This document shows positions 19,089-58,670 of a DNA stretch of 64,000 nucleotides, piece after piece; position 1 is the first letter of the stretch, and each line of letters begins with the position of its first letter. The position numbers and the translations under genes are program-made. Source of the stretch: Octopus bimaculoides. Its lineage: Eukaryota. The notes below the pieces were generated by a model. It saw only the letters and a list, made by a program, of their open reading frames with translations, ran no database searches and had not been told where the DNA came from. Where the stretch lies: contig NC_068982.1 of assembly GCF_001194135.2 (NCBI RefSeq), forward strand, positions 122,183,646 to 122,247,645. Direction: 5' to 3'.

Positions 19089-19667
19089 NNNNNNNNNNNN
19101 NNNNNNNNNNNNNNNNNNNNNNNNNNNNNNNNNNNNNNNNNNNNNNNNNNNNNNNNNNNNNNNNNNNNNNNNNNNNNNNNNNNNNNNNNNNNNNNNNNNN
19201 NNNNNNNNNNNNNNNNNNNNNNNNNNNNNNNNNNNNNNNNNNNNNNNNNNNNNNNNNNNNNNNNNNNNNNNNNNNNNNNNNNNNNNNNNNNNNNNNNNNN
19301 NNNNNNNNNNNNNNNNNNNNNNNNNNNNNNNNNNNNNNNNNNNNNNNNNNNNNNNNNNNNNNNNNNNNNNNNNNNNNNNNNNNNNNNNNNNNNNNNNNNN
19401 NNNNNNNNNNNNNNNNNNNNNNNNNNNNNNNNNNNNNNNNNNNNNNNNNNNNNNNNNNNNNNNNNNNNNNNNNNNNNNNNNNNNNNNNNNNNNNNNNNNN
19501 NNNNNNNNNNNNNNNNNNNNNNNNNNNNNNNNNNNNNNNNNNNNNNNNNNNNNNNNNNNNNNNNNNNNNNNNNNNNNNNNNNNNNNNNNNNNNNNNNNNN
19601 NNNNNNNNNNNNNNNNNNNNNNNNNNNNNNNNNNNNNNNNNNNNNNNNNNNNNNNNNNNNNNNNNNN
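19089..19667. other. Assembly gap (largest of six: 1123-1132, 19089-19667, 20658-20808, 37725-38142, 43855-44024, 50058-50149)
   Basis: Runs of N, mostly adjoining TA microsatellites. Confidence 0.99.
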
Positions 19668-19779
19668 GCCAAATCAGATTGGAGCCTGGTGTTGCCATCC
19701 GGTTTCACCGGTCCTCAGTCAAATCGTCCAACCCATGCTAGCATGGAAAGCGGACGTTAAATGATGATGATGATGATGA

Positions 19780-27315: not shown

Positions 27316-27708
27316 GGAGTGGCTGTGTGGTAAGTAGCTTGCTTACGAACCGCATGGTTCCGGGTTCAGTCCCACAGCATGGCACCTTCGGCAGGTGTCT
27401 TCCACTATAGCCTCGGGCCGACCAAAGCCTTGTGAGTGGATTTGGTAGACGGAAACTGAAAGAAGCCCGTCGTATATATATGTATATGTATATATATGTG
27501 TGTGTGTGTTTGTCCCCCCAACATCGCTTGACAACCGATGCTGGAATGTTTACATCCCCGTAAGTTAGCAGTTCGGCAAAAGAGACCAATAGAATAAGTA
27601 CTAGGCTTACAAAGAATAAGTCCTGGGGTCGATTTGCTCGACTAAAGGCGGTGCTCCAGCATGGCCACAGTAAAAAAATGACTGAAACAAGTAAAAGAGT
27701 AAAAAGAG

Positions 27709-36900: not shown

Positions 36901-38270
36901 GCCCTTTCACAACATGTGTATAGAGATTAATCTGCACACATGAGGCAGACACACCGCACACTAAAATATGTGTGTGTGTGTGTGTGTGTGTGTGTAAAGA
37001 GAGGGCGAGAGAGTGAAAGAGAGAGGAAGAATGAAAGTGAGGTATACAACCATACATGTTATGTCAAGGGTACACAAAAAAAGCAATATCTTGATATTGC
37101 TTACAAACAAGTATGTTCTTGCGTATATGTGTACATAGGTTTAAACAAATGTGTATGTGGCATGGGGCCAGTTCATATGTGAGGAAGACCACTATTTCAA
37201 TGATTTGTGAGCTCTCTCTCACCCACCCTCTCTCTCTCTCTCTCTCTTTTGCACACACATACACGTTTGTAAATCAGTATACAAACTATACATAGACAGA
37301 TAAGCAGATGAGCAACCAAACAGACACAAAGATGAGGGCCACCTGATATTCCTTAGTCCCTATGTTCCTAAAATGTTTGAAATTTTCATTTCTTACATCT
37401 TCCATGACGCTCTAACAGCATGTATAAACTGTTTTAATATATCTATAATGCTCTATAGTCAGGATGTATTTTAGGGTAGATTAAAAGCTTATGCTAAGTA
37501 CCACTTGACTGGTGCCATTATAAATTAATGACAATTATGTTGCCAATACACACACGCACACGTGTATACACACATGCACCATACACACATATACACACAT
37601 TTATATATATATATATATATATAAACATAATTAAGGGATCAGCAACAGTTGCTTCACCACATACCGAAGTTCAGAAATAGCAGCTAAAGCGCTGAAACGC
37701 CAACAAATAGCTGTTGGAGTTTCANNNNNNNNNNNNNNNNNNNNNNNNNNNNNNNNNNNNNNNNNNNNNNNNNNNNNNNNNNNNNNNNNNNNNNNNNNNN
37801 NNNNNNNNNNNNNNNNNNNNNNNNNNNNNNNNNNNNNNNNNNNNNNNNNNNNNNNNNNNNNNNNNNNNNNNNNNNNNNNNNNNNNNNNNNNNNNNNNNNN
37901 NNNNNNNNNNNNNNNNNNNNNNNNNNNNNNNNNNNNNNNNNNNNNNNNNNNNNNNNNNNNNNNNNNNNNNNNNNNNNNNNNNNNNNNNNNNNNNNNNNNN
38001 NNNNNNNNNNNNNNNNNNNNNNNNNNNNNNNNNNNNNNNNNNNNNNNNNNNNNNNNNNNNNNNNNNNNNNNNNNNNNNNNNNNNNNNNNNNNNNNNNNNN
38101 NNNNNNNNNNNNNNNNNNNNNNNNNNNNNNNNNNNNNNNNNNTTATTTGTAATATATATATATATCATCATCATCATCATCATCATCATCGTTTAACGTC
38201 CGCTTTCCATGCTAGCATGGGTTGGACGACTTGACTGAGGACTATATATATATATATATATATATGTACT

Positions 38271-38908: not shown

Positions 38909-39073
38909 GTATTTATTTTCATATGCATATGGACACTAGCTTAGCAGGGGTACTTTTGTGTCTGCTGTAGGCAATATGTAGTTTTTTGTAGTGTCTGGAG
39001 GCAGCAAACGGAAGGGCTACCCCAAGTGGCACGCACTCTAGCTAAGCTAGTGCATATATATATATATATATAT

Positions 39074-39715
39074 GAGAAATACCTAGCCAAAGATAAACCC
39101 CTATATTTGGCTTTTGTGAACTTGGAGAAAACCTTTGACAGGGTCCCCTGATCTTTTATCTGGTGGGTGATGCAGAAACTGGGGATTGATGAATGGTTAA
39201 TAAGGGTTGTACAGGCCCTATACAGAGATGCCATTAGTAGGTTTAGGATTAGAAATGAGTATAGTGAAAAATTCTGAGTAGAAGTAGGGGTCCACCAAGG
39301 ATCATCCCTCAGCCCCCTCTTATTCATCATACTCCTCCAGGTAATAATAGAGGAATTCAAGAAGGTTGCCCAGTGTAAGCTATGGACACATAAAAGGTGC
39401 AGCAACATCAAAGGAAGATTAACCGGGAAGATAGCTTTCGTGTGCAGCAGATACACAGGGGCAATAAACACCACAGATGCTCAGAAAACAGACACCATCA
39501 CATGCCAGTGGGAGAAACTGGAAGTAGTTGATAGTTTCCACTACCTAGGTGACCAAATCTGTAGTGGGGGTGGATGCTCAGAGAGTGTTACCACTAGAAT
39601 GAGAATAGGCTGGGCAAAGTTCAGAAAGCTTCTACCCCTACTGGTGACAAAGGGCCTCTCACTCAGAGTGAAAGGATGTATGATGCATGTGTGCGAACTG
39701 CCATACTTCACTACA
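39074..39715 (+). mobile_element. RTE-clade LINE reverse transcriptase fragment with internal deletion
   Basis: EKYLAKDKPLYLAFVNLEKTFDRVP..VGVHQGSSLSPLLFII..GC, then a jump at 39371 to QCKLWTHKRCS..FVCSR..LEVVDSFHYLGD..RIGWAKFRKLLPLL. The YADD segment is missing. Confidence 0.9.
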
Positions 39716-56580: not shown

Positions 56581-57302
56581 AGATGTTTAGTTTACAAATA
56601 TATCTGGAGTTGGTGCACTGCAGTAGCTGTTGGATGTTGTTGTGAAGAGAAGAGAATGATGTGTTTACAAAAGAATAAGAGAAGAGTCTTCTGACACAAA
56701 AATGTTAAGAAAACATAAAAAAGCATTGCTTTATATAGTTTTAGAATTTTAATCATTGCCAACTATCTTTTCTACTCTTTTATGCTATAGGTACAAGGAA
56801 TTGAATCACCCCAAAAGGATGAAAGGCAAAGTCAACTTGGTGGAATTTGAACTCAGAACATAACAATAGACAAAACATGGCTAAGAATTTTGTCTGGAAA
56901 ATGATTCTGCCAGTTTGCCACTTATTTGTTGCCTAATAATGCCAATATTCCTAATAACATTCAGCACTAGTTTTGGAAACAAAACTTTGTTAGATTTCTA
57001 GCTTTGCAATATGATGATCATTAATTCATCGATTATTTCACTCATCATCATCAGTTGGATCCATATCAACACACAAAATAGTTAAAATTCTAATCCATTA
57101 ATTTAACTTCATTTGAGTTTGATATCATATCTTTTGCATTTTCACAACATAACAACCAATTTTGATTTCACATATGTCCCATGGACTAAAAGCTTTTGAG
57201 ATACTTCAATAACCATTCAACACTTCCATCTTAAACCACCCCATTAAAAGACTTCTCTTATCAGAACTCTTAAACAAAATCCTCATGCAAGTTAACATTT
57301 AA

Positions 57303-57450
57303 CCTCTTTATTACCATATTTCTGTTAAAATTACCCTGTTTTTGTTTCAATGAATTTTGAAGAGAATTAAGAACTTAGAAAAATAACTGTCATTATTTAG
57401 CTGGTGTATGGAGCATACATTAACATACAGGTGGATTGTTACCAAAAGGG
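57303..57450. mobile_element. Short piggyBac-like MITE
   Basis: TTAA-CCTCTTT ... CAAAAGGG-TTAA; the internal sequence is shared with ~3090-3330 and 62433-62850. Confidence 0.55.
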
Positions 57451-57577
57451 TTAATAATATAGCTATATGTAGGAGCACTTTTAGGATGTCTGTAAGCTAG
57501 GTTTTGATGTTTTCATGAAGAAAGAAAAATTACATCCACATGTTAGTTTTTTTTTAGTTTGTTTTAGCTTACATGCC

Positions 57578-57683
57578 ATGCTAGCTATGGCAGTATACAT
57601 TCTAAAATTGGAATGATGCAAAGAAGATTAGCATTGCCCCTGTACAAGGATGACAGGCAAATTCACGAAGCATTTCATATTTT
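57578..57683 (+). pseudogene. U6: Full-length U6 snRNA retrocopy (non-functional)
   Basis: Ungapped 106-nt alignment to canonical metazoan U6, 87/106 identical by hand count against the human sequence as recalled; many changes are CpG transitions. The ACAGAGA box is mutated to GCAAAGA, and the copy ends in CATATTTT. Confidence 0.93.
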
Positions 57684-58670
57684 CTCACCCTTGCTAGCTA
57701 TGCAGATGACACAAAAGACTCTCAGATAATACAAAATCCAGGAAATATTGCACCTCTGCAATGGGAGTTGGACGCAATGTACAGGTGGGCTGAGGACAAC
57801 AACATGCAGTTTAATGCAGGAAAATTCCAAGCCCTGTACTACCAGTACACAAAGCTGAATAACATGCAGACAGTATACACTGGCCCAGGAGGAATTGCAA
57901 TCCCTGAATCAAGATCAGTGTGTGACATGAGCAATAATGCATCTTTCCAAGTGCATATTACTAATTTGGTAATAAAATGCAGACAGCTATTGATGGATCC
58001 TCAGAACTTTCAAAATAAGAGAAAAGGAGACAATGACGGTCCTTTGGAGGACATACTTCCTCAGCTGCTTGGACTACTGGTTCGAACTATGGTCACCACA
58101 CAATATGAAATTAACAGTGGAACTTGAAGCAATCTAATGAAGCTACACAAAGAAAATCGCCTTAATGCAACATATCAGCTACTGGGAAAGACTGAAAGAA
58201 TTAAAACTCTTCTCTCTAGAATGAAAGCAGGAAAGATATGCAGTGATATACATCTGGATAATCCTGAAAGGCTTTGTATCAAACTTTGGCATTGAAAGTT
58301 ACACACACAGCAGAACATGGCACTACAGCATACTGCCAAAGATCCCAGCATCTCCATCTGCAGGACGAGATATTGCAGCAGCTTGTGTTTCAAAGGCCCA
58401 CAGCTCTTCAATATCCTTCCATAATGCCTGAGAGACTTGCATGGTGTGGATGTAGGTATCTTCAAAACAAAACTGGATCTTCTCCTGTCAAGGTTTCCAG
58501 ATGAGCCTACCTCATGGCAGAAAACACGGATGAAGGCAGCAGCATCAAACTCCCTCATTTACCAAATGCCACATATCAGAGGAGGTTTCAAATAATGGTG
58601 TAGCACAGTCAACGGTGGTGCCCCAGCATGACTGCAGCTTTGAAGCTGAAACAATTTAAAGATTAAAGAG
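57684..58670 (+). mobile_element. 5'-truncated CR1-group (CR1/L2/Crack-like) LINE: RT C-terminal half plus 3' UTR
   Basis: Translates as LTLASYADDTK..LQWELDAMYRWAEDNNMQFNAGKFQAL, then after a frameshift WILRTFK..LDYWFELWSP..SYWERLKELKLFSLE, with stops. It ends in a TAAAGA(T/G) tail at ~58656-58670. Confidence 0.9.

What the first reader, a model, noticed from the sequence alone, without database searches (positions are those of the whole stretch)
57578..58670. U6 snRNA/CR1-group LINE chimeric retrocopy in an invertebrate (octopus-like) genome
Seen: a complete 106-nt U6 copy ends in exactly four T (CATATTTT, 57676-57683). It is followed with no spacer by a LINE truncated just before its YADD motif (CTCACCCTTGCTAGCTATGCAGATGAC), and the LINE runs intact to its 3' tail. 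The sequence left of U6 is not the upstream RT continuation, so U6 did not simply insert into a LINE, and no U6 promoter was recognised. Known: U6/L1 chimeras with a four-T junction occur in mammals and are attributed to template switching or RtcB-type ligation of U6 to LINE RNA before reverse transcription. Inference: the same route operated with a CR1-group LINE in a lophotrochozoan, which I do not know to have been described; novelty is unverified.
Basis: partly seen in the sequence, partly recalled or inferred. Interest (0 to 1): 0.85.

Follow-up and report, generated by a model that had tools for sequence, protein, structure and literature searches.

The report
U6 snRNA fused to octopus LINE
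A decayed copy of the spliceosomal U6 RNA is joined at its natural 3' end to the tail third of a jumping gene (a CR1-like LINE) in an octopus-type genome. This kind of "hitch-hiking" retrocopy is already known from mammals, platypus and lizard, so the case extends a known process to a mollusc rather than revealing a new one.

Summary
Window 57578-57683 is a full-length 106-nt U6 (Rfam 88 bits) ending CATATTTT. Two unassigned bases (CT) follow. From 57686 a 5'-truncated LINE runs colinearly from five codons before YADD, through the ORF2 stop (58595), to the family's canonical 3' tail (58670).

The LINE belongs to an octopod APE+RT family. A full-length copy exists in Argonauta hians. Its hairpin-plus-short-repeat tail is shared with the abundant tRNA-derived SINE of this window. 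No LINE sequence lies left of U6. Both parts are old: all U6 CpG sites are mutated, ACAGAGA is destroyed, and ORF2 has frameshifts and stops.

New support: the only other U6-derived piece in the window (4062-3999, minus strand) is also fused at its T-run, this time to that partner SINE. A U4-like sequence (5010-5146) also lies just upstream of a fragment of a different LINE.

The best reading is a U6/LINE chimeric retrocopy formed by template switching or RNA ligation. It is not proven: I found no target-site duplication, empty site or further copies.

Novelty is modest. Doucet et al. 2015 already reported U6 chimeras with L2 and RTE, and possibly CR1. I found no report from an invertebrate animal.

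The parts
57578..57683 (+). Full-length U6 snRNA retrocopy (106 nt), decayed, ending in four T
   Evidence: Rfam U6 88.1 bits, model 1-105/105. It is 82% identical to canonical U6. All 6 CpG sites are mutated and ACAGAGA has become GCAAAGA.
57684..57685 (+). Two unassigned junction bases (CT). They could be untemplated addition, lineage-specific LINE sequence, or a mutated fifth T plus one base.
   Evidence: Homology to L002 starts at 57686. Relatives encode A or S, not L, at this codon.
57686..58595 (+). 5'-truncated ORF2 of an APE+RT (CR1-like) LINE, from 5 codons before YADD to the stop codon. It is broken by frameshifts, stops and a 12-bp deletion.
   Evidence: CpG observed/expected is 0.16 here against 0.51 in relative L002. 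The ORF2 stop is at 58593-58595.
58596..58670 (+). LINE 3' UTR and tail: a conserved hairpin region (GGTGGTGCCCCAGCATGACTGCAGC...GCTGAAAC) followed by two short repeat units (TTTAAAGA TTAAAGA G). This is the family's canonical 3' terminus, shared with the window's tRNA-derived SINE.
   Evidence: Alignment A2 with the L002 LINE end and five SINE tails. RNAalifold predicts two hairpins, with 4 pairs kept through changes on both sides. The Argonauta copy has the same design.
3999..4062 (-). Second U6-derived piece: U6 nt 1-47 joined to the last ~17 nt (internal deletion of ~45 nt), ending in six T
   Evidence: blastn with U6 positions 1-47 gives 85% identity, and with 90-107 gives 89%. Rfam U6 gives 26.8 bits, E 0.016, below the gathering score. 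Sequence read.
3860..3998 (-). AAA spacer (3998-3996), then the partner SINE: a full 5' tRNA-like head (3995-3924), a 16-nt TA-rich link, then the canonical SINE/LINE-type tail ending GTAAAAGAG (3912-3860)

Best explanation
The locus is a chimeric retrocopy. During or before target-primed reverse transcription of an RNA of an octopod CR1-like (APE+RT) LINE, mature U6 snRNA became joined by its 3' oligo-U end to an internal point of the LINE RNA. That point lies just upstream of the YADD codons.

The join could have arisen in either of two ways:
- The LINE reverse transcriptase jumped from the LINE template to the 3' end of U6.
- An RtcB-type ligase joined U6 (2',3'-cyclic phosphate) to a broken LINE RNA (5'-OH), and the product was then copied.

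This LINE appears to be a 'stringent' type that starts reverse transcription on its own structured 3' tail. Under that model, U6 could be copied into DNA only as a passenger behind that tail.

The chimera was integrated as one unit, long ago, and has since decayed by CpG loss, frameshifts and stops. It has no function.

Shown here: the anatomy, the family and 3' terminus of the LINE, the lack of LINE sequence upstream, the decay of both halves, and a second U6 fusion with the partner SINE.

Inferred: integration as one unit, stringent tail recognition, and the joining chemistry.
For: 1. U6 is complete from nt 1 or 2 to a T4 run. These are the ends of the mature RNA, not of a gene with its flanks.

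2. A 5'-truncated LINE follows 0-2 nt later in the same orientation. It runs colinearly to the family's canonical 3' terminus.

3. No LINE sequence lies left of U6, so U6 did not insert into a LINE.

4. The LINE tail has predicted hairpins with compensatory changes plus short repeat units. It is shared with a SINE present 11 times in the window. This matches the LINE/SINE partner pattern and the tail type proposed as the RT recognition site in CR1 (PMC4316615).

5. The only other U6-derived sequence in the window is likewise fused at its T-run (T6 + AAA) to the exact 5' end of that partner SINE, in the same orientation. Two of two U6 pieces are therefore chimeric. By my calculation, chance adjacency is about 4e-4 for each.

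6. Both halves are comparably old. All U6 CpG sites are mutated, and the LINE CpG observed/expected ratio is 0.16.

7. There is precedent. U6 chimeras with L1, L2, RTE and their SINEs have been reported, with small or no target-site duplications for L2, and U6 moving only as a chimera with stringent LINEs (PMC4476161). Chimeric junctions with U6 ending in 4-8 T are also reported (PMC6789731).
Against: - No target-site duplication brackets 57578-58670; only 6-mers are shared.
- No empty site, second copy or read-level support could be examined.
- Two junction bases are unexplained.
- The window comes from a gapped draft assembly with N runs elsewhere.
- No U6 was found in about 65 kb of other loci carrying related LINEs, 43.5 kb of it from Argonauta. 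Recurrence therefore rests on this window alone.
- The second U6 copy has a T6 run and a TA-rich stretch at -22 to -14. A dead gene copy with a SINE beside it is not excluded for that case.
Confidence: 0.75

Rival explanations
1. Two independent events landed side by side. Either a U6 pseudogene or dead U6 gene was already there and a 5'-truncated LINE later inserted next to it, or the reverse order.
For: No target-site duplication encloses the pair. Two bases at the junction are unassigned. The region is dense in retroelements.
Against: It needs same-strand abutment within 2-3 nt of the exact mature U6 3' end, about 4e-4 by my calculation. The same coincidence would have to recur for the second U6 piece. 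A solo U6 retrocopy has no means of being primed by a LINE that needs its own 3' tail. No T-run remainder or U6 downstream flank follows the LINE 3' end.
Confidence: 0.08
2. This LINE/SINE family integrates preferentially just downstream of U6 (pol III) terminators, so the U6 pieces are decayed gene copies that attracted insertions.
For: Both U6 pieces have a family member immediately 3' of the T-run. The second has T6, as a gene terminator would, and a TA-rich stretch upstream. Targeting of pol III genes is known for some retroelements (my own knowledge).
Against: The other SINE copies in the window are not next to T-runs or small-RNA genes. The first U6 has no TATA-like box near -30. The element end that abuts U6 is the 5' end: variable (truncated) in the LINE case and full-length in the SINE case. 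No U6 flank or duplicated target follows the element's 3' end.
Confidence: 0.07
3. The junction is an assembly misjoin between a U6 copy and a LINE copy in a draft, gapped assembly.
For: The window contains several N gaps. Both partners are multicopy sequences.
Against: No gap lies within several kb of the junction. No long shared k-mer exists at the junction; the only shared word is 11 nt and lies 114 bp away. A misjoin falling exactly at the mature U6 3' end, and a second similar structure at 3860-4062, would be a remarkable coincidence.
Confidence: 0.04
4. The U6-LINE unit is one copy of an amplified composite family. On this reading a chimera became a source element, as with snRNA-headed SINEs, and is not a one-off retrocopy.
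For: Two U6 fusions in 64 kb suggest a high genomic density. snRNA-headed SINE families exist (SINEU, PMC4494074).
Against: The two fusions differ in partner, U6 form and junction. No second copy of the LINE part exists in the window. In animals studied, U6 relies on an upstream promoter that a retrocopy would not carry (my own knowledge).
Confidence: 0.06

Closest known systems
U6/L1 chimeric pseudogenes of mammals (Buzdin 2002, as cited in PMC4494074; Moldovan 2019, PMC6789731)
   Same: Full-length U6 ending in a short T-run is fused head-to-tail to a variably 5'-truncated LINE that keeps its 3' end. The product is non-functional.
   Different: The partner here is an APE+RT CR1-like LINE with a hairpin and short-repeat tail, not a poly(A) L1. 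No target-site duplication is visible. The host is a cephalopod.
U6 chimeras with L2, RTE and their SINEs in platypus and Anolis, and an unresolved CR1-like case in turkey (Doucet et al. 2015, PMC4476161)
   Same: The LINEs are non-L1 and of the stringent type. U6 is found only as a chimera carrying the LINE or SINE tail. Target-site duplications are small or absent. SINE partners (Mon-1, AnolisSINE2) also occur, paralleling the U6-SINE fusion at 3860-4062.
   Different: Most platypus U6-L2 chimeras have a 5'-truncated U6 and a short L2 piece. Here U6 is full length and the LINE piece is about 1 kb. Those hosts are vertebrates.
Chimeric and tripartite retrocopies made by the MGL LINE in Magnaporthe grisea (Gogvadze et al. 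2007, PMC2104539)
   Same: They show that template jumps during LINE reverse transcription occur outside mammals. Serial jumps resemble the arrangement U6 - SINE - 5'-truncated SINE seen at 4062-3600.
   Different: The host is a fungus, the captured RNAs differ, and U6 is not involved.
SINEU, SINEs with U1/U2-derived heads in crocodilians (Kojima 2015, PMC4494074)
   Same: An snRNA sequence is joined to a retroelement body, with template switching proposed for the origin.
   Different: SINEU are amplified families with master copies and shared breakpoints. Here each fusion looks like a separate event, and no amplification was seen.

Membership tests
U6/LINE chimeric retrocopy | U6 sequence with the ends of the mature RNA (nt 1 to a 3' run of 4-8 T) | tested here: met
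   Rfam model 1-105/105 and a 106-nt gapless alignment ending in TTTT.
U6/LINE chimeric retrocopy | Direct fusion, in the same orientation, to a 5'-truncated or full-length LINE/SINE | tested here: met
   LINE homology starts 2 nt after the T-run. The second case has a 3-nt AAA spacer before the SINE 5' end.
U6/LINE chimeric retrocopy | The LINE part reaches the element's own 3' terminus, where reverse transcription starts | tested here: met
   Colinear with L002 to its terminus. The tail aligns with the LINE and SINE termini.
U6/LINE chimeric retrocopy | One target-site duplication enclosing the whole chimera | tested here: inconclusive
   Only 6-mers are shared between the flanks. Doucet 2015 reports only small TSDs for U6-L2 chimeras, so absence is not decisive.
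U6/LINE chimeric retrocopy | An empty site in an orthologous or allelic locus lacking both parts together | not testable with these tools
   No octopus genome is searchable here. The window's own ORF is not on record and the metagenome scan found nothing.
CR1-group LINE | ORF2 with an APE endonuclease followed by RT | tested here: met
   The full-length relative in Argonauta hians (L003 9314-12379, 1021 aa) has Exo_endo_phos_2 plus RVT_1. The local fragment keeps only the RT C-terminal third.
CR1-group LINE | 3' UTR with a conserved hairpin and a short (about 8-nt) repeat tail instead of poly(A) | tested here: met
   The feature as described for amniote CR1 is in PMC4316615.
CR1-group LINE | RT phylogeny placing the element inside the CR1 clade rather than L2, Rex1, Jockey or I | not testable with these tools
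   No reference LINE library is available. The assignment rests on C-terminal motifs (SYWERLKELKLFSLE.., FK.KLD) that I recognise from memory.
Functional U6 gene | Intact catalytic ACAGAGA box and a TATA-like element near -30 | tested here: not met
   ACAGAGA has become GCAAAGA. The -31 to -21 stretch is TTTTTTTTTAG. The cephalopod PSE is unknown and could not be tested.
snRNA-headed SINE family (SINEU-like) | Many copies sharing the same snRNA/body breakpoint | tested here: inconclusive
   The window has no second copy with the same breakpoint, and there is no U6 in about 65 kb of related loci. The sample is far too small.

The most novel reading that the evidence does not exclude
Octopus genomes may carry snRNA-retroelement chimeras at high density, made by at least two unrelated LINE lineages. 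One is an APE-type CR1-like LINE with its partner tRNA-derived SINE. The other is a restriction-like-endonuclease-type LINE found next to a U4 copy. If so, capture of spliceosomal RNAs at their 3' ends would be a pan-metazoan property of non-LTR reverse transcription or of U6 3'-end ligation. Cephalopods would then be a natural system for studying it, and possibly for studying the birth of new SINEs.
Probability: 0.3. Interest if true: 0.55.

Novelty: new member of a known kind. Interest (0 to 1): 0.4.

Why it matters
It extends a process documented in mammals, platypus, lizard and a fungus to a mollusc and to a CR1-like LINE/SINE pair. That supports the view that joining small nuclear RNAs to LINE templates is a general feature of non-LTR retrotransposition.

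It also gives practical results. It defines an octopod LINE family: a full-length, apparently intact copy exists in Argonauta hians, and its 3' tail is shared with the dominant octopus SINE, naming the likely autonomous partner of that SINE. Finally, it suggests a cheap genome-wide survey (U6, U4 and other small RNAs against their 3' flanks) that could date and quantify such events in cephalopods.

Tried and rejected
- **Pfam on the local fragment:** the LINE fragment gave no RVT_1 hit because it lies C-terminal to most of the model. I settled its identity through homologues instead.
- **Self-comparison of the window:** there is no other copy of the LINE. A local consensus, and so a test for junction microhomology, was not possible.
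- **Target-site duplication search:** only 6-mers are shared.
- **Exact look-up of the window's own ORF:** not on record.
- **Other loci with related LINEs:** I fetched two Argonauta hians loci and one ENA locus (about 65 kb). They contain no U6, which is uninformative about Octopus.
- **JGI metagenome scan with the SINE tail:** zero hits.
- **U6 inserted into a LINE:** rejected, because no RT N-terminal part lies upstream.
- **Functional U6 gene:** rejected.
- **Site-specific insertion of a LINE into a U4 gene:** I looked for the 3' half of U4 downstream of the second LINE fragment and found none.
- **Suspected TTAA-flanked inverted repeat at about 57300-57455:** the repeat finder did not confirm it, so I dropped it.
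- **Microhomology at the junction:** relative L002 has TCATA 7 nt upstream of the breakpoint, matching the U6 3' TCATA. It is not at the junction and the relative is only 70% identical, so I give it no weight.

Full report
**The observation**

Rfam places a complete U6 at window 57578-57684 on the plus strand: 88.1 bits against a gathering score of 44, E 3.7e-21, model positions 1-105 of 105. The 106 nt at 57578-57683 align without gaps to canonical U6 at 82% identity and end CATATTTT at 57676-57683.

Fourteen of the 19 differences are transitions. All six CpG sites are hit, and the catalytic ACAGAGA box reads GCAAAGA. This is a dead, old copy.

No TATA-like box lies near -30; that stretch reads TTTTTTTTTAG. 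A proximal sequence element could not be tested because I have no cephalopod consensus.

**The LINE**

From 57684 the frame reads LTLASYADDTKDSQ... Downstream, in shifting frames, it shows motifs typical of CR1/L2-type ORF2 C-termini (SYWERLKELKLFSLE., FKTKLDLLLSRFPDEP). That recognition is from my own memory, not from a test.

Pfam does not hit this short C-terminal piece, but homology searches do:
- Eight RT-like proteins matched at first.
- A profile search then found P0011, an RVT_1 protein that is 61% identical to the local translation over 99% of its length.
- Its contig L002 aligns with window 57686-58665 at 70.5% identity over 1001 positions.

L002's element ends ...GGCGGTGCCCCAGCATGGCCACAGCCTGCGGGCTGAAACAGAGTAAAAGAG and is followed by unrelated (TA)n flank. 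The local copy ends in the same way at about 58670...GCTGAAACAATTTAAAGATTAAAGAG. The LINE part is therefore 5'-truncated five codons before YADD and complete at its 3' end.

It is colinear but not intact. It has several stops, at least two frameshifts and a 12-bp deletion. Its CpG observed/expected ratio is 0.16, against 0.51 in L002.

The closest named relatives are two Argonauta hians proteins. Locus L003 from that genome holds a full-length element:
- ORF1 is 291 aa.
- ORF2 is 1021 aa, with Exo_endo_phos_2 and RVT_1.
- The 3' end has the same hairpin region followed by ATACAAG repeat units.

The family is therefore an octopod APE+RT LINE with a hairpin-plus-short-repeat tail. That is the tail style described for CR1 (PMC4316615). 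I could not run an RT phylogeny, so 'CR1-like' is as far as the evidence goes.

**The junction and the flanks**

Window: CATATTTT-CT-CACCCTTGCTAGCTATGCAGATGAC. L002...CATACAGTCAGC-CACTCTCACTAGCTATGCAGATGAT.

Homology starts at 57686. The CT dinucleotide matches neither L002 nor the codon seen in three relatives (A, A, S). It may be untemplated, lineage-specific, or a mutated fifth T plus one base.

No N-terminal RT of this family occurs anywhere upstream, so U6 did not land inside a LINE. No target-site duplication brackets 57578-58670. Doucet et al. report only small duplications for U6-L2 chimeras, so this is inconclusive rather than negative.

**A partner SINE and a second U6 fusion**

The LINE's last ~55 nt align with the 3' tail of the abundant tRNA-derived SINE of this window. 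The tail motif occurs 11 times where 0.04 is expected.

RNAalifold predicts two hairpins in the shared region. Four pairs are maintained through changes on both sides, including one that distinguishes the LINEs from the SINEs. The sample is small, so this is suggestive only. It is the classic LINE/SINE partner pattern.

A relaxed Rfam scan found one further U6-like piece, at 4062-4016 on the minus strand: 26.8 bits, E 0.016, below the gathering score. blastn confirmed it (U6 positions 1-47 at 85% identity, 90-107 at 89%).

Read on the minus strand, it contains, in order:
- U6 nt 1-47 joined to the last ~17 nt, ending in six T (4062-3999);
- AAA;
- the exact 5' end of the SINE head (GGCACAGGCATGG..., compared with other copies);
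- a short TA-rich link;
- the canonical tail ending GTAAAAGAG at 3860.

A 5'-truncated SINE follows immediately, so this could even be a serial-jump product. Both U6-derived sequences in the window are thus fused, at their T-runs and in the same orientation, to elements that carry the same 3' tail.

With about 12 such elements per 64 kb, a same-strand 5' end within 3 nt of a given point has a chance of about 4e-4. This is my own calculation.

**Mechanism**

The best explanation is a chimeric retrocopy. Mature U6 was joined at its oligo-U end to LINE (or SINE) RNA, and the product was copied and integrated by the LINE machinery primed on its own tail.

Two routes could make the join:
- template switching of the LINE RT during target-primed reverse transcription;
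- ligation of the U6 2',3'-cyclic phosphate to a 5'-OH RNA end by RtcB (PMC6789731).

Sequence cannot separate the two routes. The 2-3 extra junction bases fit template jumping slightly better, but that is weak.

For stringent LINEs, Doucet et al. argue that U6 can move only as such a chimera. That matches what is seen here. My confidence in this explanation is 0.75. The rivals are:
- chance adjacency;
- targeted insertion next to pol III terminators. The second copy has T6 and a TA-rich stretch at -22 to -14, so it is not excluded for that copy;
- assembly misjoin;
- membership of an amplified composite family.

**Comparison with what is known, and novelty**

U6/L1 chimeras are classic in mammals. 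Doucet et al. 2015 also found U6 chimeras with L2 and Mon-1 in platypus, and with L1, L2, RTE and AnolisSINE2 in Anolis. They reported one unresolved CR1-like case in turkey, and called the process a general property of non-LTR retrotransposons.

Fungal LINE chimeras are known (PMC2104539), as are snRNA-headed SINEs (PMC4494074). A 2026 catalogue of LINE-1 chimeras made no mention of non-mammalian or invertebrate genomes in my term search.

Four full-text searches found no report of a U6/LINE chimera in an invertebrate animal. This is absence from the held library, not proof of absence.

The finding is therefore a new member of a known kind: first-of-phylum at best, mechanistically expected.

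**Limits**

I could not reach any Octopus assembly:
- The window's own ORF is not on record.
- The JGI metagenome scan for the SINE tail found nothing.
- About 65 kb of related loci, 43.5 kb of it from Argonauta, contain no U6.

Recurrence therefore rests on this one window.

**Also seen**

A U4-like sequence at 5010-5146 (49.6 bits against a gathering score of 46) lies 54-69 nt upstream of a fragment at 5200-5655 on the same strand. That fragment is homologous to the C-terminal domain of long RVT_1 proteins, with E-values down to 3e-29.

The fragment looks like the restriction-like endonuclease domain of R2/NeSL-type LINEs, though that assignment is from memory. No U4 3' half follows it.

This may be a third snRNA-LINE chimera involving an unrelated LINE lineage, but its junction is unresolved.

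Noticed in passing
window 3860-4062 (minus strand): Second U6-derived piece (nt 1-47 plus the 3' end, T6) fused through AAA to the 5' end of the abundant tRNA-derived SINE. That SINE's tail matches the LINE tail at 58596-58670. A 5'-truncated SINE (to about 3595) follows directly, so this may be a serial template-jump product.
   Followed up: yes
window 5010-5146 and 5200-5655 (plus strand): U4 snRNA-like sequence (Rfam 49.6 bits, just above the gathering score; the 3' half is poorly aligned). It is followed 54-69 nt later by a decayed fragment homologous to the C-terminal domain of long RVT_1 proteins, some of which also have UCH or PHD domains. The fragment looks like a restriction-like endonuclease domain of an R2/NeSL-type LINE. 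This is a possible third snRNA-LINE chimera, or a site-specific insertion.
   Followed up: partly
window 57579-57589 and 57693-57703: An exact 11-nt direct repeat, TGCTAGCTATG, links the 5' end of the U6 copy to the LINE just after the junction. In U6 it requires three substitutions from the canonical sequence (T6A, T10A, C11T). The LINE differs from relative L002 at two bases here. I have no explanation; it may be chance.
   Followed up: partly
L003 8529-12470 (Argonauta hians BAAFZT010000002.1): Apparently intact full-length member of the same LINE family: ORF1 of 291 aa with a weak CCCH zinc-finger match, ORF2 of 1021 aa with APE and RT, and a tail of the hairpin region plus ATACAAG repeats. 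It is a candidate active element.
   Followed up: partly
window, 11 sites (e.g. 484-502, 27680-27698, 43625-43643); L003 and L004: The tRNA-derived SINE (about 390 nt, with an internal TA/TG microsatellite) occurs at least 11 times in 64 kb. Its tail equals the LINE tail, which names the LINE as its likely autonomous partner. Only its core (positions ~78-173) is found in the Argonauta loci, not the tail motif.
   Followed up: partly
window 39038-39337 (plus strand): Remnant of a different reverse transcriptase, 28% identical to the N-terminal RT part of P0011. It is unrelated to the finding.
   Followed up: no
window about 19090-19690, 37720-38190, 43850-44020 and other sites: Runs of N (1420 in all) and many TA/TG/GA microsatellites. 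The window comes from a gapped draft assembly, which matters when judging misjoins.
   Followed up: no
window 4062-4044 and 57578-57596: Both U6 copies carry T at U6 position 17. The second copy also has A at position 3, which would keep the 5' stem pair 3:17 as A-U. This may reflect a native cephalopod U6 variant rather than decay.
   Followed up: no
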